Both the position numbers and the translations under genes were made by a program. From Cyanophora paradoxa CCMP329 (taxonomy: Eukaryota; Plantae; Glaucophyta): 64,000 nt of DNA. Positions 27,255 to 44,124 of the stretch are shown here, in pieces (the stretch's first letter is position 1; each line of letters opens with the position of its first letter). Below the pieces are notes generated by a model, which ran no database searches, was not told where the DNA came from, and saw only the letters and a program-made list of their open reading frames with translations. The stretch covers positions 372,001-436,000 of the forward strand of contig QPMI01000015.1 in the NCBI GenBank assembly GCA_004431415.1. Reading direction: 5' to 3'.

Positions 27255-28090
27255 GCCGCTGCCGCCGGCGCCGCACGCGGGGAGGGGGCCGGGAGATAGG
27301 GGAAGGGGGAGGGGGGGGCGGGGGGGAGCTGGCGGTGGCGCCGGCGCCGGCGGCGCTGCTGCTGGGCCCCGGCGAGCGCGGCGCCTTCACCCTCGCCTGC
27401 ACGCTCCGCCGCCAGCGCGCCTTCCGCTGCGCCCTCGTCGCCGCGCCCCCGAGCGCGCTTGGCGCCTCCGCGTCGCCGGCGAGGGCGCCGCCGTCGCCCT
27501 CGGGCCCCTCGCCCGCGCCCTCCTCGCCGCCCTCGCCCCGGACCCCGCCTCCGCCCCCGCCGCCGCGTCCGTCGCCGCCCGGCCCGGGCTCCCGCGCGGG
27601 GGCCCGAGCCGGCGGTGGCGGGCGCGGCTCTCGCGGCGGCAGCTGCGGGGGCGGCAGGGGCCCCTCGCCCTCCCCGTGCGCCTCGCCTCCAGCCCCGCCC
27701 CTCCGTCCCCTCCTCGGGCGCCGCCAGCCCCGCCCCGCCCCGCACCCCCAGCCGCCCTCCTGCGCCAGCGTCGAGATCCCCGCCCCGGCCCCGTCGAGGA
27801 GGCGGGCCCCAGCCCTCTACCCCTCCCCTCTGACACGCCCCCTGACACGCCTCCGGGGGTACAGGTGGTCGCGGACGTGCTGGAATCGCTGCTGGTGGCC
27901 CTCGCGGGGGTGGCCGGCCCCGCCGCCCCCGCCGCCCCGCCGGCGCCGCCGGCCCTCGCCCGCGCCCGCCGCCTGGCGGACGAGGCGCGGGAGAGGGCGC
28001 GGGCGGCCCTCCGGCCCGCCCTCCCCGCCCCCGGCGATCCCGCCGTCGACGCCGTCCTCTCCTACGGCCCCTCCGTCCGCCCCTTCCATG
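27255..28090 (+). pseudogene. Isolated GC-rich gene fragment retaining an intron (no start, truncated)
   Basis: Coding-like GC-rich block with a putative intron (~27801-27864) before VVADVLESLLVALAG..., abrupt AT-rich borders, and a diverged second copy at 37284-37780. Confidence 0.5.
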
Positions 28091-28520
28091 GCCCACGCTC
28101 GCCAGCAAGCGTGATAATTTCGAAGCGGTAGCTCGAATTTTTAAGAGCCTCGGGATCGCTGTGTGCGATGCGATGAAGCATGATTGCCGCTCTTTCAAGT
28201 GTAGCCTTTCCTTGCCACTGGATCGGATCGATCGCGAGCCGCTGAGCTGTTCATGAGCGGCAGCTGGTGGGGCCCCCAAAAAAAACAAATTGCTCGGATA
28301 GGTCCGGGATCCGGCCAGGCAGGGGGGTACGTTGGGGCACTACGTATACACCCCGCCGTACGCGTAGCCTTGCCGTGGATGTCGTCGACCGAATTGCTCG
28401 GGCGCGAGCGCTTCGCCGTCCTGTCGACATCGCGCGCGCTCGTCAGCTTCCGGATCCGCGGCCTCTCGCGATCGGGTGAGGAGGAGCAGAAGATCTAAAC
28501 CCTGGGCTGAGCTTCCTGAC

Positions 28521-31500
28521 TCAGTGGTCATGATCATGAGTTTCGAGGCGACGGAGCAGCTCGTCGCGAAGCTGCCGGACCGCGATCCCGCGTTCGAATT
28601 CGCGCCCTCGTTCAAGCGCTAGCGCGCCTCGCTCGCCTTTCGCGCCTTCGACCCCGCCGAGATCCCCGTGCGCGCGGAGGCTCGCCATCTTCTCGAAGCT
28701 CGAGCGGCTGACGGACAGCGTGACGGCCGACGTCTCCACCCTCCTCCTGCGCATGCACCAGCATGCAGGTATTTATTTAAGCGGCATACAAGTACAGGAA
28801 ACAGGTATTTGTAGGCAACGATTAACAGGATCCTGCAGACGAGTGCTGTATTTTTGCGACTATCAACTAAAACGAAAGCGAAAGCGAAAGCGAAAGTGCA
28901 GGAGCGCTAGTTTGGTCATGTACGTATACGTCACTAGCTATAGTGCTGCAAAGAACCGGACGTCGACATGCAAATGTGCATCGACTAATTTATTGAGTCT
29001 CGTGCTCAAAACTAAGAACAATGAGACTCTAGCGAACTACCAGGATCATCGGATTCATTGGTGCCCTTCTTTTTTGCGAGCGCTCAAGCTCGAGCCAAGA
29101 GCTGCTTATGCATTTAAATGAAAACCGCGAAAACAGCCGTTATGCCGAGGGCAATGCCGAGTAAATCCTGAGGACAAATCACTTCAGGCGAGCTTCCGAA
29201 GTTCGTTCCAAAACGTCATACGTATGAGAAGAGCTCACCGTAAAAGCGTGTACATGCGTTGAGGTTGCAGCGCTCGGCCAGTACGGCACATTAGTGGTTG
29301 ATCCCGTGGGGGTCCATGTGAAGGCCTGCTCGGAAACACACATCGCATGGAGCGGATAGGAAAACCGAAGTTGCAATTGACAGCCCACTGGGCCACGCAC
29401 ATTCGCAAAAACGACCGGAGCAAACGGGGCCTGACCGGGGGCAGCCTCGATACGAACGTTGTACTGCAAGGAAACATTGACATCAGAATCTGAAGGCGTG
29501 GTGGCAAATTGGTGCGCGGGATACAAACCGGCGTGTTTGTCGAGAAGAGCAAGTGGCGGCGCGCAATTTTGGGAGCCTCTGTGATACATGCATTAATATC
29601 AGCATGCCTATAGCTATTTGCGATGCTCTGAATTCAGCGGTCGGGTTTGCAATCGATTGCGGCGCGCGCACTGAATTTAAGAACGACATTCTGGCCAGTT
29701 CCCGTAACGCTCACATCCGTGGCTTGGATCTTGTTTCCAGCGTTGTCGGTGATATAGACCACGACCAGCTGGTTAGGCTGGTATACGTAACAGGAATTTA
29801 ATTTACAGGAGTTGGATCCAGATTGTTTTGTTACATATACAAGAAAAGCGGGACCTGGAGGATGCCGACGACTGGGATTGTGATCACTTCGGAAGAACCA
29901 CTCTGCAGATTTGAATACTGATCAGCTGCAGTTGACTGACGGCATGTGACATATATGGGTGACATTTTTCAAACTCACCTGAGGGGCGGAAGCGACGGGG
30001 GCGGAAAGGGTAAGTTTGTAAACGATAACACCATTGCTCTCCTGCCGAAATGTAAGGAAAATGGAAGCGAAAAATTGCGGAACACGATCTCGATCCCACC
30101 GTCTCCTTTACAAACTGTGAAACGTTGAACTGCAATATTCGAAGTCAATGCACTGATCATAATCGCGATCGGTGCCTTTGAGAGATATCTATACGAAAGA
30201 ACTCAGGTCGAATCACGCGTACCGATTTGCCGCCTATAACTACGGTCGCTGTGGAGCCCGAGGCGAAGATTTCCTGCAGAAGAGAGGATTCAATTTTGAT
30301 AAAGCGAAATGAATAAACGCGGTGATTCCGAACCAGCGGCGGTGCTACAGCGCTAGCTGCAGCTGGCGAAGGCGACGGCGTAGTCGCGGGGACTTGCGAC
30401 GACGGTGCCGAGGTCGGAGTGGGAGTCGCGGCGGCCGGGGGCACTTGGCTGCAACGAGCGTGCACGTGCACGTGCACGTGCGCACTCATAATCAATGTTT
30501 CTTGCAATTGATGTGACCGTGGGCAGGTGTTCAGCATCAACAGCAGTACCTCGAGGGGCTTGGGGTGGGCGAAGAAGCTACAACAGCAGCTGCAGGACTG
30601 GGCGACGGAATGGCCATGGCCATGGGCGACGGGCTGGCCGTGGGCGACGGGCTGGGAGAGGGGCTCGGAGTGGGTGGCACCGGAACGCAGTTCACTAACC
30701 ACGATCATGGCTCGTCAAATTCGAAAAAGAAAGAAGCTGAAGAGTGAAACAATACAGGGGGGATCTTTGCGATCGCGATCGCACCGACTCCCGTGGCGTT
30801 GAAGCCGGCTTCGTTGGCGCTTGTGTCGGACTGGAACATCAAAAAGATTTTCGCCGACGAGTCCGTCGTGGAGTACGTTGGGAGGGTGCTGCCATCGATG
30901 ACGCCGCCCGGCGACGGCCCTACGCCAGTGATCGCGGACAAGTTCTTGGCAGTGTTGTCGAAGACCTAAAAGAGTACATGCACATCTATATCAAAAGTAC
31001 GTATACTAAGAAAGGAAAGCGTTACTGATATGTTCGAATTCAATGTGGCGCGGCGGCGGCGCGCACGTGAGCATTATCGCACATGGGGTTGCAGTCATAT
31101 TCGACGGCGAGGTTTGCGAACGAAAGCGTCACGTTGCTATCGCTGGCGCAACCGGCCGGCACTTCAAAGATCCTGCGTGACCATCATGATCATCACGTAT
31201 ATATGCGGCGATTCGTATTGTGTATGATGGGAAACGCGCGGACCAAATGCCAAAATCCTGGGCCTGATAAGGCCCGAAGTTTACGGAGGCCGTAGTGTCG
31301 TACTTAGAAGTGGTAAATCTCTGGACGTCGGAGATAGCACCCGATGTCGACGGATCGAGAGGCGGTGCGGCCGTTGGCGTCGCTGGCAGGGAGCCCGAGT
31401 CAGAGCATGCACGCGCACACGATCTAACATGTGCGGCGTGGGCCGGGCGACTTACATCCGACCTTGGCGATGCTCCAGTAGCGGGTTGAGATACTCTGTG

Positions 31501-32161
31501 TGCCGAAGGCGTGCCACAAGAAAACAATCACGTTCTGCGATGACGAGGCCACTGTGGTTCCGGCGGTTTGGAAGCTGCTTCCGATGGCCATCAGAGCCGG
31601 CGGGGAGACTCCAATGTCCACAATCTGCAATATTGCGTACGCGTGCGCATTGTCATTCTTTGCATAAAGTATACGTAGATGCAATTCTTTTTAATGTGCC
31701 AGCGCACCTTGATGGAGGTTCCATTGAAGCCAACTGGAGTCGTAGAACTCACGACCTCTACCTGGACGACCTGATCCGCCGGGGCCGTGATGGTCCTGCG
31801 CTTCGGAAATGGCGTTAACGTTATCGATATCCTAACAGCACATCAATTCGATTTGGAATTCGATTACAGCACATGTTCAACGTATGCTGTAGCTATCTTT
31901 ATAGAGGAGGTATATGTATATCAACGCAAATATAAAGCTTGGTTAAAAACGCAGGACGCACCACGCATAGTTACCGTACAAGCTGGCACTGTATTCCAGT
32001 GTGATGTTTAGCCAAGCGGGCGTTGACGACGCAACGAGCGCTGCCGGCTGTGTGCTGTCTGCCGAGAGCTGACCGTTGACCACCGGAGCAAGGATGCATA
32101 CGGCCGCGGCCGCGTAGAGGAGAAGGGCCACGCAAGATTTAGATCTAGAGGCGCTCGGCAT
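28521..32161 (-). CDS. Secreted/membrane protein with CUB-like domains and a Pro/Ser/Thr-rich stalk
   Basis: Signal peptide MPSASRSKSCVALLLYAAAAVCILAPVVNG. Spliced exons GPYQAQDFGIW|IFEVPAGC..VTLSFANLAVEYDC and IFLMFQSDTSANEAGFNAT fit the CUB consensus. (SP/TP)n linker at 30.35-30.68 kb; hydrophobic segments near 29.15 and 28.8 kb. The 3' end is uncertain. Confidence 0.6.
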
Positions 32162-32672
32162 ATGCATGGTGAGCGGCGCGATACACAATGGCTGTGGCCA
32201 CGCGCTGTACATATGCATGTACATGCGCGTCGAATTCGAAGCCCGACGTCGACCGCCGGTCTATATCGATATCTGCGCACAGATCTAGAGTGCGTGTGGA
32301 ATCACTGTGCCACGGTGGATCGATATCTTCTCAAGTACCCCTGAGTCGCCCTGACCCGGCTGCAGCTGAATCCGGGCTGATCGTCGACTGTACCGCAGCC
32401 GCCGGCGCCGGCCGGTCGACGTCGACGTCTCCCTGCTAGCGCTCCGGATCCCGGAGCCTCCGGGCTGCCTGCAGGCTGCAGCCTGCAGCTGGCGCAGCGA
32501 CGGCACTCGCTGCTGAATCTCTGGATCACTGACACATGAGTGAGTCTGTGTCGACTCTGTGACTCTGTGAGTCGATCATCATGGCATGCGCATATGCATC
32601 ATGGCATGCGCATGCGCGGCCGCCGGGCGCAGCCTCGCAGGCCGCGCGCGCAGCTCAGCGGCTGTCACAGTA

Positions 32673-32895
32673 CTGTGGGAATGCCGCAGTGCTTATTTAG
32701 CCGATGTTTTATATTGCCGTAAATTGCCGAGAGGCCGAATTCGGCAATTTAGCATCACGGCAATTGCTTGGAGGGTAGGTATTTTTCTAGCCCGCCATAG
32801 ATCAGACTCTGGATTCGGCAATTTATCGCCACGGCAATTCCAGTTTTGGTCGAATTCGGCAATTTAACTACGCGGCAATTTAAGCATTCCTACAG
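32673..32895 (+). mobile_element. MITE copy 1 (Tc1/mariner-like ends, TA flanks)
   Basis: TA|CTGTGGGAATGC ... GCATTCCTACAG|TA (11/12 inverted match); subterminal AATTGCC/GGCAATT repeats. Confidence 0.75.
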
Positions 32896-32953
32896 TACTA
32901 GCCTAGTAGTGTGAGTCTGTGACTCTGTGTGACTGGTAATGTATCATAGTATA

Positions 32954-33182
32954 CTGTAGGACTCCCGGGATTGCTTAAATTGCCTTGCCGAATTCGACCA
33001 AAACCGGAATTGCCGTGGCGATAAACTGCCGAAACTCCGAATTTGTTCTACGGCGCCATACAGAATCGGCCGTTTTGCCCTACCGGTACCCCCCACAAAT
33101 TGCCGCGGTTCTAAATTGCCGAATTCGGCCTCACAGCAATTCACGGCAATTTAAAACATCGGCTAAAAAAGCATTCCTACAG
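32954..33182 (-). mobile_element. MITE copy 2, inverted relative to copy 1
   Basis: Begins TA|CTGTAGGA and ends GCATTCCTACAG. Its reverse complement aligns with copy 1 over most of the length (tttagccgatgtttta.attgccgt.aattgc.g.gaggccgaattcggcaatttag). Confidence 0.75.
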
Positions 33183-33488
33183 CCCAGTATATACGTAAAT
33201 TAAGTAACGTAATGCGGCCGCTGATCATGAGCTAGCGCTGTACTAGCCTGTACAGCCTGTACATGTATATAATACGATATATACTGCTTCCGGAGGCTGG
33301 ATCCGGATCCGGAGGCCGGCCGGGTGGATCGATCATCGATTCACCAAAAACAAGGATCGATCATGGATCATCGGATATCTTCTCGGGTACCGGACCTACC
33401 GTGTCACGGTCCGTGTGGGACGGTGTGGCACTAAATTACCGCGGCATAAATTACCGCGTTAGAAACTCCGGCCCGAGGGTGGCCAAAA

Positions 33489-33732
33489 CTTTGCTTCGAG
33501 TTTTTTGTCTGTATGCCCCCTGGGCAGCCCGGCCCCGCAGTGCTGGTACATGTCTAGAGACTTCGAATCCCGCGGCCGCCCGCTCCACATAATTCCGATC
33601 GATCATGTCCCACCTTGCCTGTATACGCCCCCGCAGTGCTGGAGTAGACTATAGCTAGAGGCTGTGGCCGGTAATTCACCAAAAAAATAGAGACTGTGGC
33701 CGGTAAATTGCGGCGGTAATTCACCAAAAAAA
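33489..33732 (+). mobile_element. 5'-truncated, rearranged non-LTR retroposon 3' ends with target-site duplication
   Basis: Contains the same terminus (..tatgccccctgggcagccc..cgcagtgctgg..agactgtggccggtaattcacc-An) as 34524-34961, flanked by the direct repeat AGGGTGGCCAAAA at 33476-33488 and 33733-33745. Confidence 0.65.
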
Positions 33733-34148
33733 AGGGTGGCCAAAATACCGCGGTATACGTACCAAATTAATTACCGCGTTTCAAAAAAACTTGAGGCTTG
33801 CAATTGTACATGTATGGGGCGGTACTTTTGGGGGGTACTGTATGAGGCGACTTGCCAGCAGAGAATTACTATACCGGGTAGCTAGTACTAGTAATGGGGC
33901 GACGTCGACTACCGTACCGTCGTCGGCGTAGTACTAGACTAGCCTAGTAGTACTAGTATCTTAGTAATAAAATTAGCTACCGTAGTACCGGTCTCCCGAG
34001 TCCCGCGGCCGGCCCGGCTGGTCCGATCCCGGACTCCCGGGTGCGCACTGCGCAGCCTCGAGCTCGAGCTCAGCGCAGGCCGCATGCGCAGTGCGCATTG
34101 CGCACTGCGCAGTGCCGCAGTACTAGTGCTGCAGTAGTGCATATGCAT

Positions 34149-34270
34149 GGCAGGCTTGTCTCATTCTGGCCCAGTGGGCGCCGGCAGGCTTGTCTCATTC
34201 TGCACATGTACAGCCGGGCGCCTGGCAGGCTTGTCTCATTCTGGGCGCCTCCCGCCCGGGCTTGTCTAGA
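34149..34270. repeat. Short tandem repeat GGCAGGCTTGTCTCATTCTG x3 plus a partial copy
   Basis: Copies at ~34149, ~34182, ~34224 and a partial at ~34259. Confidence 0.8.
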
Positions 34271-34523
34271 TCTAGATCTGCAAGCCGAATACAAGCCGGG
34301 AACTGTAGTATACAGGCTATGCCTTCATGCCGGCAGCCGGCGGCAGGTACGTATGCCGGCGATTTGGCGGCTAGCCATGCCGGCATGGTCATGTCATATA
34401 TAATGCCGACTTTTGCGGCTTAGTCTACTGTACATCATTCAGTACATGTAAGTCGGGAAATATTTAGTATACTGGATCTTTATATAGTACCAAAGTTTTT
34501 TGGCCCGACTACTAAAGTTTTAT

Positions 34524-34961
34524 GTGTCCTGTGTCCTCCTCGACCTCGTGCCGTAGCTCTGCCCTTTCGCATCGTCCTGCTTCGCCTCCGCCTCCACGTC
34601 GTCTTGTTGTTCCTCTTACTTGTCTGCTTCCTGTTATTTATCTTTCTCAATTTTGTCCTCCGCTTCTTAGTGATGTATACGTAATTCCTTCCGATATTGA
34701 TGGTCTCTCTAGCTCTGTCTCTTCTTCGTGTCAGTCATCCAGGACTCATCCTCTGTCCCTAGATCTGCTCGATTTTTCGTCTCTTCTCGATCTGTCTCGG
34801 GCTCTGTGTCTTTTCTTTTTTATTGTCGATTTTGGCTCTTTGTCTTATCTTTCTTCGTGCTCTTGTCTTAGTTATTTTGCTTTTTTGTCTTTATGCCCCC
34901 TGGGCAGCCCCCGCAGTGCTGGTGTCTAGAGACTGCGGCCGGTAATTCACCAAAAAAAAAA
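34524..34961 (+). mobile_element. Poly(A)-tailed LINE/SINE-type insertion (438 bp) with a 14-bp TSD
   Basis: TACTAAAGTTTTAT at 34510-34523 and 34962-34975 brackets a pyrimidine-rich insert ending ..ggtaattcacc-A10. Confidence 0.8.
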
Positions 34962-36104
34962 TACTAAAGTTTTATCGTATACTAAACCTGAGGTGCTGGC
35001 CATGGGGGGGTATACGTACGCAGCGCAGCTGTAGTTGCAGCGCGGGAGAAGCTAGCTATAGTGCGAGGGGGCCGCCGGGCTCCCAGACGCTCCAACAGAT
35101 CTAAACCCCCTAGCGCGCTACTAGGCCGCCCCCTTCTAAAGGCCGCTCATGATCAGCTTCTAAAGCGCTCCGCGCGGCCAACTCTTAATTATTTTCAGCC
35201 TACTAAACCGACCAAACCTGGGGATTACTAATTATTTTGGGGACTTGAATATTACCCGAATTACAGTATGGCATAATGCCCAATTTTGACTGACCGGCCG
35301 GACGGCCCGGACGGTGGCCCGTCGGTGGGCCGGACTCCGGGAGCCGCCGGACCCCTAGTGGTCCCCTACCGGTAGTAGGTCCGGTACCGTACGCGTGGCC
35401 GGCAGTGATGGCATTCTTTCTAGAAACATTTTTTAATTCTATTCCAGGAATAATTCCTAGAATGATTCCTGGAATGGTGCTTGGAACGCCGGCGCCGTTC
35501 TTTCAGGAATTGTTCCGAATAAGGGGGGGTACTTGTTCGTGCGCGGGATTTTTCGCCAGAACGCAGCACACATGTACAGCGTCCAGCAGAGCGCGCCCGC
35601 ATCGCAAATCGATGTCTGGTGAGAACGAGGGCTCATGATCAGCTGGCCTGCCCGCAAGCTTTTAAGCGGCCTGCCCGACGACGTCGACGACGACGTCGCC
35701 GAGTCGACATGTCCGGATCCACGTACAGCTGCAGCTCGAGCTCTCTGCTGCACCTTACAATTAAGCTTCGAACGCATGAAAGTTCGGAACTTTGAAAAAA
35801 GGAAGTTTGGACTACCCGAGGAAAGATATACTACCCGAGTTTGGAGATCTAACGGGTACATATTACAAAATACGTATACGTACCGGTACCGGTACTGGTC
35901 GGTCCGATAGAGATCTAGACTTACCGACCCCCCCCCCCCCAGGCCCCCACCCCTTGCTAGCTGGGTATAGGTTTACTAGGTCTTCGACTCGCCCCCTCCC
36001 CCTGCTCGTCTCAGGATGTGCAAGGTGGGGTCTAATTATAAACTACAGACTCTGAAAGACAGCATCTGAAGGTAGCAGCTGAACGTTCGCTAGGCGTAGG
36101 GCTG

Positions 36105-36580
36105 GGCCGCCCGGCGGCAAGCCGCGCCGCCGCCCGCCGCGCCGCCGCCCCGTCCGGCGAGCCGCTCCGCCGCCCGCCGCATCCCTGCCCCGGCTGCGAG
36201 CCTCGGAGCCGCGCCGCCGCCCGCCGCACCTCCGCCCCGTCCCGTGAGCCGCGCCGCCGGCGCCGCCCGCCGCCTCTCCGCGCCGTCCCGCGAGCCGCGC
36301 CGCCGCCCGCCGCCTCTCCGCGCCGTCCCGCGAGCCGCGCCGCCGGCGCCGCCCGCCGCGCCTCGTCCCCTGTCGGCGAACCGCGCCGCCGCCCGCCGCG
36401 CCTCCGCCCCCGCCGGCGATCGCGAGCCCGCGGCCGCGCCGCCGCTCGCCGCATTTCCGCGCCGTCCCGCGAGCCGCGCCACCGCCCGCCGCGCCTCCGG
36501 TTCCGCCGGCGAGCCGCGAAGCCGCCCGCCGCGCCTCCGCCTGTTGCCCGCGGCCGCGCCCCGCCCTGGCGAGCCGCCCA
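36105..36580. repeat. GC-rich minisatellite (about 35-45 bp unit, CGAGCCGCGCCGCCGCCCGCCGC..)
   Basis: About 10 imperfect copies seen directly. Confidence 0.75.
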
Positions 36581-37102: not shown

Positions 37103-37178
37103 GGCCGGCTTGGACAAAAGGACAGACAATCCGACGGGTAGCAAGGGGGGTTTGAGCAGCTGACCCCCCCTTGCAATT
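37103..37178 (+). repeat. Dispersed repeat copy A with terminal stem-loop
   Basis: ggccggcttggaca..gacagacaatccgacgggtagcaa-G6..agctga-C7-ttgcaat; shared with 44027-44124. Confidence 0.7.
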
Positions 37179-37283: not shown

Positions 37284-37780
37284 CTAGCTGCGAGGGCGGC
37301 AGGGGCCCCTCGCCCTCGAGCTCCGGATCCCCGACGATTCCCCGTGCACCTCGCCTCCAGCCCCACCCCCTCCGCCCCCTCCTCCGGTGCCGCCAGCCCC
37401 GCCCCGCCCCGCACCCCCCAGCCGCCCTCCCGCTCCGGCGCCGAGACCCCCGCCCCCACCCCCGTCGAGAAAGCGAGACCCCGGCCCCTCTACCCCTCCC
37501 TCTTCCCCCCCCTGACACGCCCCCGGGGGGTACAGGTGGTGGCGGACGTGCTGGAGTCGCTTCTGGTGGCCCTCGAGCTCGCGGGGGTGGCGGGCCCCGC
37601 CGCCCCCGCCGCCCCCGCCGCCCCGCCGGCACTCCGAGGCTCGCCCGGGCCCGCCGCCTGGCGGACGAGGCGCGGGAGAGGGTGCAGGGCCGGGGGCCCT
37701 GCGGCCCGCCCTACCCGCCCCCGGCGACGTCGACCCCGCCACAGACGCCGTCCTCGCCTACGGCCCCTCCGTCCACCCCT
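37284..37780 (+). pseudogene. Degenerate second copy of the 27.6-28.1 kb gene fragment
   Basis: Collinear similarity (ggcaggggcccctcgccctc..cctgacacgcc..gggggtacaggtggt.gcggacgtgctgga..) with indels that break the frame. Confidence 0.65.
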
Positions 37781-38245
37781 TTAATTTTCATCTAGATTTC
37801 TTGCCTCATCCATCCTCCTTTGTTCTGACGCCGGCTCGCTCGAGCGCAGGTCGCCGGTGTGAGCGTGGCGGGCCTGCTGGCGGCGGTGGAGCCGGCCTGC
37901 GGGGACCCCGCGGCGCCCCTCTTCCGCGCCCCGCCGTCCTTCCCCCGCAGGGAGGACGGGGCCCCAGCGGCCGGCGCGCCCCTCGTCCCCGCCCCGCCCC
38001 GGCCCGGCCCCGGGCGCCCCCGCCGCCTCCGCCTTCCGGCCTTTGAGGCCCACCCTCCCCAGCAAGCGCGGGAAGCAATACTAATATACAAACTCGCGAT
38101 CGCAAATGCCTATATATGTTACCAATTGCGAGTGCACAATTGCAAGTGCTAGCTCGAAACAGCTTAATTATAAATATTAATCGGAATCGTATCCGTCGTC
38201 GTAGCCGTATAAATCGGAATCGTAGTCGTCCTCGTAGTCTTAGTC

Positions 38246-41200
38246 TTAGTCGTCCTCGTCCTCGTCCTCGGAATCGTACTCGGAATCGTACTCGTCCTCT
38301 GAATCGTAGTCGTAGCTATAGTCGTCCTCGTAGTCGTCGTATCCGTATCCGTAGTCGTACCGACCCTGCCTCCGCCGGCCCCCGTACGGCTGATAGTCCG
38401 TCGTCACCCGGTTCTGAAGGACGCCGTGCAGCAGCGCCCCGATTCTCTCCTGTCCCGCTGTAGCCTTGTCCACGTCTGGGAAGCTTGCCCGCCCGCGCAT
38501 CTGGTGCCTGCGCATGCCGCCCACGCACTTCAATCTTGATCTAGATCTGAAATTTCTATTTAAATGAAAGAGGACTCGGGAGAGATAACAAGCTTTTAAG
38601 GCGCCAGTGTGCATGCGTGCGTACGCAAGCCAGAGGTACAGTTGGATGGCCGATATTTTCTCTGCAAGCGGCTCGCAAAATTTAAAAAAAGTAGTTTAAC
38701 ACGTGCGCGTGGTAAATTAAAAAACGGCAGAACGCACCCTCTACGGTCTCGATGTCCTCTTGGCTGTGGGACCCGCCGGCGTTCTGCGCCAGATAAATAC
38801 TCTCCATGTGGAGCTCGGATGGAAGGCGAATGTGTTGAATTCCACTCCCCAGATCCAACGCCACTCGCTCCTGCATACACATTACATTTAATTTCGTTTT
38901 CACAATTGCAGTTTGATCGATCAGAATTCGAATTTGGCTTGCGCTTCGCGCACGAGTAAGCGCTGACTTGCTGTCACTTTGCGGTCGTGGAGCCGCGCCG
39001 GCGACGTGCAGAGCGTGTAGCGGTCGCGCAGGCTCAGCTGGGGTCCCGCCCGTTTGGAGTCGCGATCCACGATCCATGCGACTCGCTGCGATCTTGAATT
39101 ATTTATGGCGCCGGCATGCGCAGGGACATTGTTGCGCAGGCATATATATACGTTGCAATACGTTGCAATACGAAGCCGGGGTCGAGTACGAGCGAGCTAG
39201 ATAGCTTTATTTCCGGGACAGCTTTTATTATAACGCGCGCACGAGCATGTCCTTAATGTCCCGAAGAAAGTAGAGGTTTTCCATGCAATCAGTGTCGCCG
39301 TCGTCGACGACGTCCGCAAACGCCTTCTGCGAAGCCACGAGATTGCATAGTCATATTAGGAATGGGCCACGAGATTGCATATGCATATTATATTATCGGC
39401 GTTCGAATTCCGAAGTTCCATGGCCATTAATATTTGCCGAGAATCAAACTTGAAAGATGCGCTCGAACCAAAATGGAATACAGAGAGGTGCCGGGTTCCA
39501 TCGCGTCCGCAAACATTTGCACGCGGTCGAAGGAGGGGAAGAGACCCGCCGCCTGTCATGCGCGTGATCGTTAATCCCAATATTAATCACAAAAAGCGAT
39601 TCGCATGGTGCATAACAACTTGGAGTGAATCTTAGTCTGAATTTCGGCACCTTCACGTTCGGAGTGGGCGCCTGGAGCTTGTCTCGCACGCTGTCGAGAT
39701 CGTACGGGTCCAGCGCCGACACGAACCCCGCGCTGAAGCGGCCGCCAAAGCGGCCCGCGCGCCCCGCGATCTGCTTCACCTCCAGCGCCGTGAGGGGGCG
39801 CGTCTCTTTGCCGTCGAACTTCTCCACCTCCGAGAACACGACGCGCCCAATTTTCCTGCATGTGCGTGAGATAAGAATAAGTAAATTTATAGAAGGTGGA
39901 GAAGCGGACAGATTGAGGCCCATGCCGATCGCGTCGGTGGCGACGAGAATGGCGCGGATCCCGCAGCCGGAATCTGAGTGCCGGTTGAACAGCTTCGCCT
40001 GCTCCACGCGCTGCGAATTCGAGTTGACGTTGGAAATGTTTCAGATAGTCGATGTTCTTGCAATTGATCGACATATATATGCATCAATGTCAATTTTCCG
40101 CGCACCGTTTCGGGTGGTAGACCTCCGTAGACAACGCAGCACTTGAAGCGGGTCGAAGACTCGATCTGCCGCTTGACGTTGTACACCTCCTTCCGCGAAA
40201 ACGCTGCCCCGCATCAAATCGTAATTTATAAGAAATTAAAAGCAGGGCAGAGAAGACAAGAAGTGCGCTCGGACCGACAACGCAGTCGCCAGGCCTGACG
40301 GAGCTCCAAGAAGAGACGGGCGTCGACTCGCAGCGAAGCTCGAGGTGTCGGCTGTAGTGGAGCACTTTAATCTTGTCGCCCTGCAGCGCGCACAGCCGAT
40401 GGATCAGATCCTCTGCGCAGGGGCTCCCGCAGACGTGCACGGCGGGGGCCAGAAGCCCCTGCAGGGCTCGCGTCCACGCGTCGCCGCGGGACGGGTCGCC
40501 GATCATCTGGATCTGGCAAACGAGAGTTCAGAACTTCAGCATCATAAATGCAGCAAATATGAATATTATTAATTCATTCAGCATACGCTAGGGCATGCGC
40601 ATGCGTACCTCATCGATGACGGCCAAATCGTACAGATTCTCCGTGCTCGCCATCTCGATGGTGCACGACACCTGCGCGTGCGCGCGTGAATGAAGATTCG
40701 CGCTTTATTATATAAGAATAATTAACCAGTCCCGCTATGTGGTTAATGTTACAGATGCAGAGATGCACTCACGTGGGAGCCGAGCTCGCTTTCGCCATCA
40801 AGGTCGCCGTTCTTTCGAGCCTCGGCGCGCGACGGCGCCATCTTCCAGCCCAAGCTCTCTTGGCCCCTGCGAGCGGAAAAGAATGCTCGAATCGATATTG
40901 AGTGAAGGATCACGCAAGCATCGAATTCATGATCATGCACGTGAGGAGGTCGCATTTGACACCGCGTTCATTGAGCGTCTCGTATATCTGCAAGCACGAT
41001 AAAATATTTTTACAAAGAGTTGCAATTGAGCGCGAGGATGCTGCAATTCGCGAGGGCTGGGAATACCTCGCGGGCGAGTAGGCGCAGCGGGGCGCAGTAG
41101 ATGCCGGTCGGGGCGGCGGCGAGGGCCTGCAGTGCCGCGTGCGTCTTCCCACTGTTCGTCTCCCTGTGGCAAAGCAAAGCGAAATCCGAAACTGGTCATT

Positions 41201-43924
41201 CATAATAAGCTCCACAAAGAATGAATCCAGAAAGCACCCTGAGTGAAAGGTGACGGTCCGTTTCATTGCGCGCGCTGCAGGATACCAAGTGTGTGGCTGT
41301 TCATACGCATAATATTAATATGAGAATTCAGTAGAAATTCAATAGAATTCAGCCCCCACCAGCACATGCGCACCTTGCGCAGGTCGGTCGCGTCCTCCTC
41401 CAGCATCCTCCGCCGGACCTCCTCCGCCCCCGCGGCCGCCCGCGCGGACTCTTCCTCGGCGACGAGGCGCGCGAACTCGGCGAAGACGGGGAGCAGCAGG
41501 CGGCAGGCCTCGCGGCGGCCCTTCGGGTTCACCGGGAGCTCCTTCAGGGCCCCCGCCAGCAGGCGCGGCGTCCCCTCAATCCGCTCGCTGTGTCCGGTTC
41601 AGAGCAATGAAAAACAGTTATCCGATCCATTGCAGTTATCCGAAAACAACGAACTTGGGAATATAGTGGCGCGCAAATTTGAGTTTGTTCTGAAAAAATA
41701 TGATGTCATCAGAATTCTTCGACTTTATCCACTGTCGCACAGCGATCAAGCAAGTACGCATACCTTGGCATATTCTGTGAAGTGTTCATGGAAAGATGTC
41801 GATGAGGCCTGCTCTACATCAATGCACTGTTTGAAGAAGCTGTAAAATCCCTCAGATGCCTGCGGATTCTCTCAAGTCAATCGGCAATCGATTGCTATTT
41901 CAGCCCGGCAATTTGATAATTCGAACCTCGGCAAATTGCATCTCGCCGATCCGCTTTTCCTCGAAGGCGAGCCTTTTTGCGGTGACTCCCCCGCGGCAGA
42001 GGAAGGCCGCCCAGTCCAGAGCGCCGTATACGTACGTCGGGCTTTCGCGCCGCCGCTTTGAATTCGAGTTTAAATTTCCAGCGTGCTCTCTGCAAATTTG
42101 CGATCAAGAATGACGTAATCAACAGAGCAAGACATTCATTTGCGCTGAGAGTTTCTTAAACTTAGATGAATGAAATCTGGACGGACGGATCCGGATCCGG
42201 AGGTACGCTTTCTGAAGCCGAAGGCGCCGGCGGGGTAGCGGGGGCTTGCGCTTGGAGTTTCCGAGTGCTTCCGCTGCGAGAAGTATAAATTACGATATTT
42301 ATAATCACCAGGATTCTGATGATCGTCTTTTATTCAATTAAATTAAATGAATCATGATCGGTTTGAGTTCCATCGTTCCGTTCGTTCGATTATAATTATA
42401 GATAATTATATTGCACCTCTTCTTGCGATCGGCGTTGATCTCCTCGCGAATCGTCTTCATGAGGTTGGGGTCGGGCTTGATGCGCTGCCTGACGGCGTTC
42501 TTGAACGCTTCCGTCTCGCTCGCTTTTCCGATGGGGAGCCCCGCCGCCTTGACAGCGATGCCGAGAAGCTTCCGCTTGTCGCGCGGCCAGACGTCGTTTA
42601 CTATCTCCAGATAGGCTTGGTCGTCGCTGGAGCTCTTCGCGATCGAGCGCAGTGCGGCGGCAACGCTGGACCGCAGGAGCAGGCTGTAGTCACCCTTGTC
42701 GCCGCCGTCGACGTGCGCCCGCCGGAGCGACTCGAACTGGCTGAGCTCGAGGTCGAGGCCGAGTTTGCGAAGCTCGACGTCTGCGACGGTGTTGTAGCGG
42801 AAGCAGAAGCTGCAGGCCCGGACGAGGAGGCCCCAGCGGGTGCGCAGCTCCCTCGCCCGCATCGCCCCGCAGCCGCCGCAGGGCCCTGGGAACGCCAGCT
42901 CCACCAGACGGCGTGGATTGTCGCGGCTGTTCACGCCCGCCTCCTCCGCCTCGTCCAGGACGGCATCTGGCAGCGCCAAGAACGCGCGCCGCCACAGCTC
43001 GTCGGTGGCCGCGAACTCCGTCGTCAGCATGAGGCGGAACCAGCTGTCGACGCGGGACAGGGAGACCAGAGACTGCGGGTCCTCCGCCACGCGGCTGAGG
43101 ATGTTCATGAGGGCCCGCGAAAACGAAGGCCAGGGGCCAGCATCGCAAGCACGCTGCAGCTGGCAGAAGGGGTTGGTCTTAGGCTGCCGAGAACTTGAGC
43201 CCGGGCCTGCCAGCGATGCCATAATCATGAGAACTATTCTCATAATAATCTGAGGGCTTTGATGAATTTCGAGCGCACCCCTTTTGGTCTGCTCTCGACC
43301 GGCGCACGGCTGGGCAGCAGCCTCGGATTTGTGCGTCGATCGCGAAGATCTAGAGCGCTCGCCCTCCGAATCCGAACATTCATTTCTCGAATTCGCTGAA
43401 GTCGCTCGCGATGCCTTCCGCTTCGAAGCGTGTGGGCCTGCAGCTGCGCGAAATCCAAGCACACTGTGACAAGGAGCTCTCGACGTCAGAGCCTGATCAT
43501 GATCATGATCATGAGAGCGCGCTGCGGGCGGAGGTCGATATCGATCAAGGAGCTATTGCAAGTCATGATCAGCAGGCATTAACTATTTATATACCGGCAT
43601 TGTCTCGGAGCTCGGCGCTCGGCGCTCGGCTCCGTTTCGACCCCGCTGTCAAATTCTGGGCGGTTTCGAATTCGTGCACGTGCGCCGGCGCCGCGACCTC
43701 GTGCCGCCCACTCTCGTGCCGCGGCCGTACGCGTGCTTGCGGCGGGAAACTCGAGCTCGAAGCCGGATGCGCATCTGCGCGCGACCTCGCGGTAAATTCG
43801 AATGACCGGTCACATTCGAATTCTCCCACGCCGCGCCTCCGCCGCGCGCGCACGCACCGGACTCGAGCTCGCTGTCGTCATTCTCGACCTCGGCGACACG
43901 CCGGGCGTGCGAACGCGTCTGCAT
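38246..43924 (-). CDS. SUV3: SUV3 (SUPV3L1)-family SF2 helicase with an apparent N-terminal F-box-like + CxxC..CxxC module and an acidic Tyr/Asp-rich tail
   Basis: Helicase part: DLRK|[46 protein letters not shown]|[72 protein letters not shown]. The F-box exon joins in frame through five GT-AG introns. SUV3 identity is high confidence; the fusion is moderate. Confidence 0.85.
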
Positions 43925-44026: not shown

Positions 44027-44124
44027 GGCCGGCTTGGACAGCGTGAACGTACATGAGTCTGCGTGACAGACAATCCGACGGGTAGCAATTAGGGGGGAAA
44101 AGAAGCTGACCCCCCCTTGCAATT
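44027..44124 (+). repeat. Dispersed repeat copy B with terminal stem-loop
   Basis: Same blocks as 37103-37178, with an internal insertion. Confidence 0.7.

What the first reader, a model, noticed from the sequence alone, without database searches (positions are those of the whole stretch)
38246..43924. F-box-SUV3 helicase fusion: a candidate non-mitochondrial SCF-coupled SF2 helicase
Seen: the large exon (~43200-42417) encodes an F-box-like segment ([37 protein letters not shown]) followed by [16 protein letters not shown]. It splices in frame into the SUV3 body through five consecutive GT-AG introns with matching phases (exons 42273-42187, 42089-41927, 41859-41764, 41689-41655, then from 41587). 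The N-terminus is acidic/low-complexity with basic NLS-like patches (SKRSR, SKRKASR, SKRRRE), not a mitochondrial presequence. Known: SUV3 is the organellar degradosome helicase, and the F-box helicase I know of (FBH1) uses a UvrD/SF1 motor. Inference: an independently evolved ubiquitin-ligase adaptor with an RNA/DNA helicase, possibly for nucleic-acid surveillance or defence. It sits in a TE-rich, lower-GC island, as expected of a paralog rather than the housekeeping copy.
Basis: partly seen in the sequence, partly recalled or inferred. Interest (0 to 1): 0.82.

Follow-up and report, generated by a model that had tools for sequence, protein, structure and literature searches.

The report
F-box-like zinc module joined to SUV3
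In the alga Cyanophora paradoxa, an intact SUV3-type RNA/DNA helicase gene lies directly behind, and probably in one reading frame with, a conserved module that looks like an F-box followed by an XPA-type zinc finger; I found no description of this pairing, but no transcript evidence could be obtained.

Summary
The sequence features are real. On the minus strand a 21-exon, all GT-AG, frame-consistent chain runs from 43206 to the stop at 38246. Exons from 41296 down encode an intact SUV3 DExQ helicase.

The 262-residue upstream exon belongs to a small conserved family:
- a 65% identical Cyanophora paralogue;
- single-exon, syntenic, roughly 340-residue stand-alone genes in Trebouxia green algae.

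F-box status is only partly supported:
- Pfam is sub-threshold (E 0.19), and the LPxE motif is lost here though kept in relatives.
- Eight SKP1-bound F-box proteins fill the top 16 structural matches (Z 3.7-5.3).
- Language-model neighbours are F-box clusters.

New here: residues 106-201 resemble the Rad14/XPA zinc-finger DNA-binding domain.

The fusion is probable (about 0.55) but unproven:
- Exon 3 shows in-frame coding bias yet has no start codon of its own.
- The SUV3 core exon has none either.
- The public AUGUSTUS model already joins the two parts.
- Against it, exons 4-5 look intron-like, exon 2's frame is doubtful, and an ATG at 41761 could start a separate SUV3.

"TE-rich" was not confirmed. 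The scan noted the same arrangement on another contig (s1-517627); I could not test that.

The parts
43207..43924 (-). Putative 5' coding exons and introns. The best ab initio start is the ATG at 43924. The last 5' intron is 43278-43207 (72 nt, AT-rich, donor GTGCGC).
   Evidence: The ORF from 43924 has the best codon score of the three frames (+44.5). A small splice/codon dynamic programme prefers ATG 43924 (score 77 against 3 for ATG 43222). Ab initio only; no RNA and no homology.
42417..43206 (-). Exon E1: the conserved 262-residue N-module (F-box-like helices, C4 zinc finger with alpha/beta domain, helical tail ending ...REEIN).
   Evidence: It matches the public model P0001 at 100% and paralogue P0002 at 65%. 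A profile search finds 22 family members, including Trebouxia proteins. Codon score is +182 in frame. AlphaFold2 mean pLDDT is 79.8.
42977..43132 (-). F-box-like helical segment (module residues about 25-76). The LPxE start is replaced by S-F-x-R in this copy.
   Evidence: Pfam F-box-like E 0.19, 12 bits, profile positions 9-46 of 47. VIA-align matches to SKP1-bound F-box proteins: beta-TrCP1 Z 5.3, FBXO3 4.7, Cdc4 4.3, FBXO31 4.2, FBXW8 4.0, Fbs2 3.9, Fbw7 3.7, SLY1 3.4. ESM Atlas F-box clusters. Relatives keep LPEP/LPDG.
42602..42889 (-). C4 zinc finger (CxxC, 18 residues, CxxC; all four Cys invariant in the family) plus a small alpha/beta domain, Rad14/XPA-like (module residues about 106-201).
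   Evidence: C109, C112, C131 and C134 are invariant in 22 sequences. The Foldseek top hit is the Rad14 DNA-binding domain (E 0.2, prob 0.92, TM by target 0.48). VIA-align gives Rad14 Z 4.9 (91 aligned) and human XPA Z 4.5 and 4.3. ESM Atlas XPA_C clusters match. Weak Pfam ArfGap zinc-finger hits occur in 9 of 22 relatives.
42187..42273 (-). Candidate linker exon E2 (GC 0.67). Its frame and acceptor are uncertain; an alternative acceptor lies at 42250.
Evidence: GT-AG ends and consistent phase. The dynamic programme prefers acceptor 42250. There is no ATG in any frame (read).
41927..42089 (-). Candidate linker exon E3 (SKRRRE...MQFAE), the best supported of the four linker exons.
   Evidence: It was not used for training, and it scores +21.3 in the predicted frame against -1.5 and -1.3 in the others. 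Its ORF opens at 42103 and has no ATG before 41941, so it needs an upstream coding exon (read).
41655..41859 (-). Candidate exons E4 (41859-41764) and E5 (41689-41655) with the intron between them. Both are doubtful. An ATG at 41761 opens a 41-codon ORF in frame with E5.
   Evidence: GC is 0.44 and 0.40; codon scores are -9.7 and -1.7, within the range of introns. The ATG-41761 ORF is listed (41636..41761). Its first 17 residues are basic with no acidic residue.
41374..41587 (-). Exon E6: the helical region just before the SUV3 core (ends ...DATDLRK). It has no start codon of its own.
   Evidence: Codon score +77. In frame, a TGA lies just upstream of the acceptor and there is no ATG (read). 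It is part of public model P0001.
38246..41296 (-). Exons E7-E21: SUV3 helicase core and C-terminal domains. Elements are motif I GETNSGKT (E8, 41163-41067), the DEIQ box across E11/E12, motif [10 protein letters not shown] (E15, 39855-39651), Suv3_C_1 (E18), an LYLWL helix (E20), and an acidic Tyr/Asp/Glu tail before the stop at 38248-38246.
   Evidence: Pfam DEXQc_Suv3 on E8, E11 and E12, and Suv3_C_1 on E18. PDB SUPV3L1 and Suv3 match. tblastn with P0033 and P0034. Exon phases checked.

Best explanation
This is most likely one intron-rich Cyanophora paradoxa gene, from the ATG near 43924 to the stop at 38246, with about 25 exons.

Its product would be about 1,030 residues from E1 to the stop, and more once the unconfirmed 5' exons are counted. 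It would carry:
- an N-terminal module, made of an F-box-like helical domain followed by a C4 zinc finger and alpha/beta domain of the Rad14/XPA type;
- a basic, low-complexity linker;
- a complete, apparently active SUV3 DExQ helicase.

Shown here:
- The domains are present, and the module is a conserved family.
- The helicase motifs are intact.
- The splice chain is frame-consistent.

Inferred:
- The two parts are translated as one protein.
- The zinc-finger/XPA-like domain brings the helicase to structured or damaged nucleic acid.
- The F-box-like domain docks a partner. That partner would be SKP1 if the degenerate start still allows it, which would make the protein an SCF adaptor that is also a motor, in the manner of FBH1.
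For: - The 21-exon chain is GT-AG throughout and open.
- Exon 3, held out of training, has strong in-frame codon bias (+21.3 against -1.5 and -1.3). Its ORF has no ATG before its last five codons, and exon 2 has no ATG at all, so it must be fed from E1.
- The SUV3 core exon E6 has no start codon of its own.
- Similarity between the two Cyanophora paralogues, and between them and the Trebouxia proteins, ends at ...REEI, five residues before the predicted donor at 42417/42416. The family's usual C-terminal C2H2 part is missing.
- A multi-exon path scores 115-127, against 71 for a single 829-nt intron. Introns of this genome average 86 nt (PMC6704402).
- The public BRAKER/AUGUSTUS model P0001 already joins the module to SUV3.
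- Another first-stage note reports the same arrangement on another contig (s1-517627; not tested by me).
- Domain identities rest.
Against:
- No other protein among 1.8 billion representatives joins this module to SUV3. That single-sequence search also missed the Trebouxia relatives, so its reach is limited.
- In Trebouxia the module is a stand-alone gene with no SUV3 nearby.
- Exons 4 and 5 look like intron sequence, and exon 2 scores better in other frames.
- P0001 is demonstrably wrong downstream: it skips exon 7 and reads into introns.
- Genes in this genome are packed end to end, with overlapping UTRs (PMC6704402).
- F-box models are below threshold and the LPxE motif is lost.
- All structural Z scores are 5.3 or lower.
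Confidence: 0.55

Rival explanations
1. These are two adjacent genes. A stand-alone F-box-like/zinc-finger protein, as in Trebouxia, would end in or shortly after E1. It could end at the stop at 42340-42338, or after E2/E3 at the stop just past 41927. A separate, ordinary organellar SUV3 would be translated from an internal start such as ATG 41761.
For: - The module is a stand-alone, syntenic, single-exon gene in Trebouxia.
- The paralogue's public model P0002 ends shortly after ...REEI without a helicase.
- ATG 41761 opens an ORF in frame with exon 5. Its first 17 residues are basic and free of acidic residues, like a presequence.
- Exons 4 and 5 are intron-like.
- Genes are densely packed with overlapping UTRs (PMC6704402).
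Against: - The gap would be only about 140-400 nt.
- E3 shows in-frame coding bias but cannot start on its own.
- The stretch from ATG 41761 to exon 5 scores like intron sequence (I4, -0.44 per codon).
- The read-through tail after 42417 is 30% GC junk.
- The donor at 42417 fits this gene's donor pattern (score 4.1, within the training range).
Confidence: 0.28
2. The fusion is real, but the helical domain is only F-box-shaped and does not recruit SKP1. The module would then simply be a zinc-finger nucleic-acid- or protein-binding extension that targets or regulates the helicase, with no ubiquitin-ligase link.
For: - The LPxE start kept by relatives is S-F-x-R here.
- Pfam F-box-like reaches only 12 bits against a cut-off of 24.3.
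- A family profile finds no F-box chain in the PDB by sequence.
- Structural Z is 5.3 or lower, a range the tool warns is common for helical models.
Against: - Eight of the top 16 structural rows, out of 48,161 chains, are F-box proteins aligned over their F-box plus linker helices.
- The nearest language-model clusters are 67-90% Pfam F-box.
- Relatives keep a canonical LP(E/D) motif.
Confidence: 0.35
3. The locus is silent or decaying, and the long open chain has no present function.
For: - The public gene model is poor, which may reflect few RNA-seq hints.
- No transcript-derived protein with this module exists in the searched databases.
Against: - All 21 exons are open with canonical splice sites.
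- All helicase motifs are intact.
- The module is 65% identical to its paralogue, with conservation concentrated on family-invariant residues.
Confidence: 0.08

Closest known systems
SUV3 / SUPV3L1 (DExQ-box SF2 helicase of the mitochondrial degradosome)
   Same: - Motif I (G-x-TNSGKT), the DEIQ box and QIAGRAGR are present.
- The Suv3-specific Pfam domains DEXQc_Suv3 and Suv3_C_1 match.
- The PxxWYPxAR lead-in is present.
- Collinear tblastn matches to algal and fungal SUV3.
   Different: - It is preceded by about 400 or more residues that canonical SUV3 lacks: the F-box-like/zinc-finger module plus a basic linker.
- It ends in an acidic Tyr/Asp/Glu tail.
- No presequence is evident at the favoured start.
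FBH1 (F-box DNA helicase 1)
   Same: The concept is the same: an F-box placed N-terminal to a helicase motor in one polypeptide, so that an SCF ligase is carried by a translocase. This rests on established knowledge of FBH1; see also PMC7913671, listed.
   Different: - FBH1's motor is a UvrD-type SF1 helicase, while this one is an SF2 SUV3 helicase.
- FBH1 has a canonical F-box, while this one is degenerate.
- There is no sequence relationship, so any likeness would be convergent.
Uncharacterised F-box-like/C4 zinc-finger family of Trebouxia green algae (e.g. P0017, P0019, P0021) and P0004/P0005
   Same: The same module from the F-box-like helices through the invariant CxxC...CxxC to the ...EI(N) helix (profile E 1e-36 to 1e-62).
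   Different: - The Trebouxia proteins are about 340-residue single-exon stand-alone proteins.
- They keep LPEP and end in a C2H2 finger.
- No helicase is nearby.
XPA / Rad14 minimal DNA-binding domain
   Same: A C4 zinc finger followed by a small alpha/beta domain. It is the best Foldseek hit, with VIA-align Z 4.3-4.9 over 86-91 residues. ESM Atlas XPA_C clusters also match.
   Different: There is no Pfam XPA_N or XPA_C hit, and sequence identity is 14-18%. The scores are too low to claim homology.

Membership tests
SUV3 helicase family | Pfam DEXQc_Suv3 (PF22527) above the gathering score | tested here: met
   46.7 and 51.8 bits on single exons E8 and E12 (cut-off 27), and 21 bits on the 21-residue E11.
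SUV3 helicase family | Walker A (G-x-TNSGKT), DExQ box and motif VI (QxxGRAGR) intact | tested here: met
   GETNSGKT in E8, DE|IQ across E11/E12, and QIAGRAGR in E15, all read.
SUV3 helicase family | Suv3-specific C-terminal domains (Suv3_C_1, SUV3_C) | tested here: inconclusive
   Suv3_C_1 is met on E18 (26.8 bits, cut-off 22.5). SUV3_C is seen only as the LYLWL helix and a weak tblastn match (E 4.7), because single exons are too short for the model.
SUV3 helicase family | Mitochondrial or organellar targeting presequence | not testable with these tools
   The 5' end is unconfirmed and no targeting predictor is available. The alternative ATG at 41761 gives a basic N-terminus.
F-box proteins (SCF substrate receptors) | Pfam F-box (PF00646) or F-box-like (PF12937) above the gathering score | tested here: not met
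   F-box-like scores E 0.19, 12 bits against a cut-off of 24.3. Only 2 of 22 family members reach E 1 or better.
F-box proteins (SCF substrate receptors) | LPxE(I/L)L start of helix 1, which contacts SKP1 | tested here: not met
   The window copy reads S-F-S-R-A-L at these positions. Relatives have LPEP, LPDG or LPDP.
F-box proteins (SCF substrate receptors) | Three-helix F-box fold superposable on SKP1-bound F-boxes | tested here: inconclusive
   Eight F-box proteins sit in the top 16 of 48,161 chains and a ninth at rank 24, each aligned over its own F-box region. However Z is only 3.4-5.3. ESM Atlas TM is 0.48 to an F-box cluster.
F-box proteins (SCF substrate receptors) | Binds SKP1 | not testable with these tools
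   No complex prediction or experiment is available.
XPA/Rad14 DNA-binding domain | C4 zinc finger (CxxC, 17-19 residues, CxxC) followed by an alpha/beta subdomain | tested here: inconclusive
   The four Cys are invariant. Fold matches are Foldseek E 0.2, prob 0.92, and VIA-align Z 4.9, 4.5 and 4.3. There is no Pfam XPA hit.
FBH1-type F-box helicases | UvrD/SF1 helicase core behind the F-box | tested here: not met
   The motor is an SF2 DExQ SUV3 helicase.

The most novel reading that the evidence does not exclude
Cyanophora makes a SUV3 helicase that is itself an SCF ubiquitin-ligase adaptor. Its XPA-like zinc finger would read unusual DNA or RNA structures. This would be a second, independent invention of the 'F-box helicase' idea known from FBH1, built on an SF2 organellar-type motor and working outside the mitochondrion.
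Probability: 0.15. Interest if true: 0.75.

Novelty: new variant of a known kind. Interest (0 to 1): 0.5.

Why it matters
SUV3 is known as the helicase of the mitochondrial RNA degradosome, with debated nuclear roles. The only well-known F-box helicase, FBH1, uses an unrelated motor.

A SUV3 that carries an F-box-like domain and an XPA-like zinc finger would:
- show that motors and ubiquitin-ligase adaptors have been coupled more than once;
- give a concrete handle on non-organellar SUV3 functions in a deep-branching alga.

Independently of the fusion, the work defines an unannotated conserved module. It is F-box-like plus an XPA-like C4 finger, shared by glaucophytes and Trebouxia and resembling many fungal F-box proteins. 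It is worth a family description.

Tried and rejected
- Exact look-ups of P0001 and P0002 found no contig, so the paralogous locus could not be read.
- Single-sequence searches of the module against the PDB found nothing. A family profile against the PDB gave only chance coiled-coil rows.
- The first AlphaFold2 run, with 6 sequences, was too poor to use (pLDDT 55).
- A SUV3-side word search found no other Cyanophora SUV3 of 196-625 residues. That neither shows nor excludes a canonical copy.
- Two metagenome scans for the module were blank.
- P0009, listed in P0004's cluster, is a Microviridae ORF and irrelevant.
- A TE reading of the island was rejected for lack of any repeat or Pfam signal. 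tblastn and blastn of the gene against the whole window found no second copy.
- Exons were searched one by one by reference. The only joined sequence used is the public model P0001.


Full report
**Organism and setting**

The module exon matches two EukProt proteins named tig00000076_g2421.t1 and tig00000215_g18665.t1. The second carries the accession EP00741_Cyanophora_paradoxa. The window is therefore from the glaucophyte Cyanophora paradoxa.
- Its genome is 67.6% GC, with densely packed genes.
- Genes average 9.2 introns, with a mean intron length of 86 nt.
- The BRAKER/AUGUSTUS models need manual curation, by their authors' own statement (PMC6704402).
- The locus sits in a 0.54-0.60 GC stretch between flanks of 0.70-0.82.

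**The helicase**

Reading the minus strand, I laid out 21 exons from 43206 to 38246.
- A script followed the phase exon by exon, without building a joined sequence.
- Every intron is GT-AG, every split codon is sense, and there is no internal stop.
- Single exons hit Pfam DEXQc_Suv3 at 46.7 and 51.8 bits (cut-off 27) and Suv3_C_1 at 26.8 bits.
- The motif I exon matches human SUPV3L1 and yeast Suv3 structures.
- Algal SUV3 proteins P0033 and P0034 align collinearly from 41302 to about 38624, with E 1e-44 for the core.
- Motif I (GETNSGKT), DE|IQ and QIAGRAGR are intact.

**The upstream exon**

The 262 residues encoded by 43204-42419 have no significant Pfam or PDB sequence match. They are nevertheless not orphan.
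- Besides the window's own model P0001, there is a 65% identical paralogue, P0002.
- An exhaustive single-sequence search found three distant relatives.
- A profile search found 22 proteins, mostly about 337-366-residue hypothetical proteins of Trebouxia species.
- The alignment shows a shared module:
  - an F-box-like stretch, which in relatives starts with LPEP or LPDG;
  - an invariant Trp;
  - four invariant Cys (CxxC...CxxC);
  - a helix ending ...EI(N).
- In Trebouxia the gene is single-exon and syntenic between a TTL gene and an AP mu-subunit gene. It ends in a C2H2 finger and has no SUV3 nearby.

**Is it an F-box?**

- Sequence models say 'not significantly'. F-box-like scores E 0.19 for the window copy, and only 2 of 22 members reach E 1 or better.
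- The LPxE start is lost in the window copy.
- With the 22-sequence alignment, AlphaFold2 reached mean pLDDT 79.8.
- An all-against-representatives structural search put SKP1-bound F-box proteins at ranks 1, 4, 5, 8, 10, 13, 15, 16 and 24. They are beta-TrCP1, FBXO3, Cdc4, FBXO31, FBXW8, Fbs2, Fbw7 and SLY1, with Z 3.4-5.3. Each aligns over its own F-box and linker helices with model residues 13-106.
  - Each Z is weak.
  - By my own rough estimate rather than any tool count, F-box chains are a very small share of the 48,161 chains, so this concentration is unlikely to be chance.
- Language-model features give F-box clusters as nearest neighbours (score 0.97, 206 of 256 features shared).
- The ESM Atlas shape search also leads with an F-box cluster.

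I conclude that the fold is F-box-like, family membership is not shown, and SKP1 binding is open.

Model residues 106-201 contain the two Cys pairs.
- They give the Rad14/XPA DNA-binding domain as the best Foldseek hit (E 0.2, prob 0.92).
- VIA-align gives Z 4.9, 4.5 and 4.3 over 86-91 residues.
- XPA_C clusters appear in the ESM Atlas search.
- Weak ArfGap zinc-finger hits in 9 relatives fit a C4 treble-clef finger.

This is a resemblance, not demonstrated homology. It suggests that the domain binds nucleic acid.

**Is it one gene?**

For fusion:
- A codon log-odds score was trained on E1 and E6-E21 against the introns. It gives the held-out exon 3 +21.3 in the predicted frame, against -1.5 and -1.3 in the other frames.
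- Exon 3's ORF opens at 42103 and has no ATG until five codons before its donor. Exon 2 has no ATG in any frame. Intron 1's ATGs run straight into stops.
- Exon 6, the first strongly coding SUV3 exon, likewise has no ATG, and a stop lies just upstream.
- Similarity between the paralogues, and to the Trebouxia proteins, ends at ...REEI, five residues before the predicted donor. The family's C-terminal part is absent.
- P0001 itself joins the module to SUV3.
- A separate first-stage note reports the same arrangement on another contig. I could not check it.

Against fusion:
- Exons 4 and 5 are compositionally intron-like.
- Exon 2 prefers another frame. The dynamic programme picks acceptors 42250 and 42055, which lack this gene's invariant CAG.
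- P0001 is wrong further down.
- The module stands alone in green algae.
- An ATG at 41761 opens a basic, presequence-like ORF in frame with exon 5. That could start a separate SUV3 or an alternative product.
- No database protein elsewhere carries both parts, though search reach was limited.

I put the fusion at about 0.55 and two genes at about 0.28.

**The 5' end**

- A typical 72-nt AT-rich intron (43278-43207, donor GTGCGC) precedes E1 and removes the ATG at 43222.
- The ORF from ATG 43924 has the best codon score in its region, and a small dynamic programme prefers it.
- Localisation is undetermined.

**What is not supported**

- 'TE-rich': there is no repeat or second copy of the gene in the window.
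- There is no Pfam hit in the ten longest ORFs of the neighbouring low-GC island and no Rfam hit.
- The locus's low GC is explained by about 20 AT-rich introns.
- 'Defence or surveillance' and 'paralogue of a housekeeping copy' are untested.

**Literature**

Full-text searches for SUV3 with F-box and helicase, and for Cyanophora with SUV3, returned nothing describing such an architecture.

The only joined sequence used is the public model P0001.

**Verdict**

- The helicase is real and intact.
- The upstream module is real, conserved and previously unannotated. It combines an F-box-like fold with an XPA-like zinc finger.
- The fusion between them is probable but unproven.
- Interest is moderate. 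It would rise sharply with one spanning transcript and a SKP1 interaction.

Noticed in passing
window 27728-28085 and 37398-37781: A GC-rich direct repeat (77-84% identity, about 9.67 kb apart). Each copy lies just left of a low-GC island (28.1-36 kb and 38.1-44.3 kb). A tandem array with 40-46-nt steps fills 36076-36549.
   Followed up: partly
window 44065-44124 and 37121-37178: A 60-nt motif (87% identical, same orientation) brackets the whole SUV3 locus. The similarity extends patchily over about 110 nt. Its meaning is unknown; it could be a small dispersed repeat.
   Followed up: partly
window 28100-36000: A second low-GC (0.54) island with no Pfam-recognisable ORF among its ten longest and no Rfam hit. 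It contains an 85-nt inverted repeat at 32690-32774 / 33089-33173.
   Followed up: partly
window 41636-41761 (minus strand): An ATG overlapping the donor of reader exon 4 opens a 41-codon ORF in frame with exon 5. Its start is basic and free of acidic residues. It is a possible alternative start for a presequence-bearing SUV3 isoform.
   Followed up: partly
L002, L003, L005 (Trebouxia contigs), gene at 10001-11014/11101: The green-algal relatives of the module are single-exon genes in conserved synteny. A TTL gene and a divergent 142-residue ORF lie on one side, and AP mu-subunit and gamma-carbonic-anhydrase-like genes on the other.
   Followed up: partly
L008-L011: The 90% cluster of P0004 also lists 54-residue ORFs that sit in Microviridae genomes (Phage_F, REP_ORF2-G2P neighbours). 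This is a clustering artefact, unrelated to the finding.
   Followed up: yes
window 38249-38360 (minus strand): The SUV3 protein ends in a roughly 35-residue run of Tyr, Asp, Glu and Ser with no counterpart in the SUV3 proteins compared.
   Followed up: no
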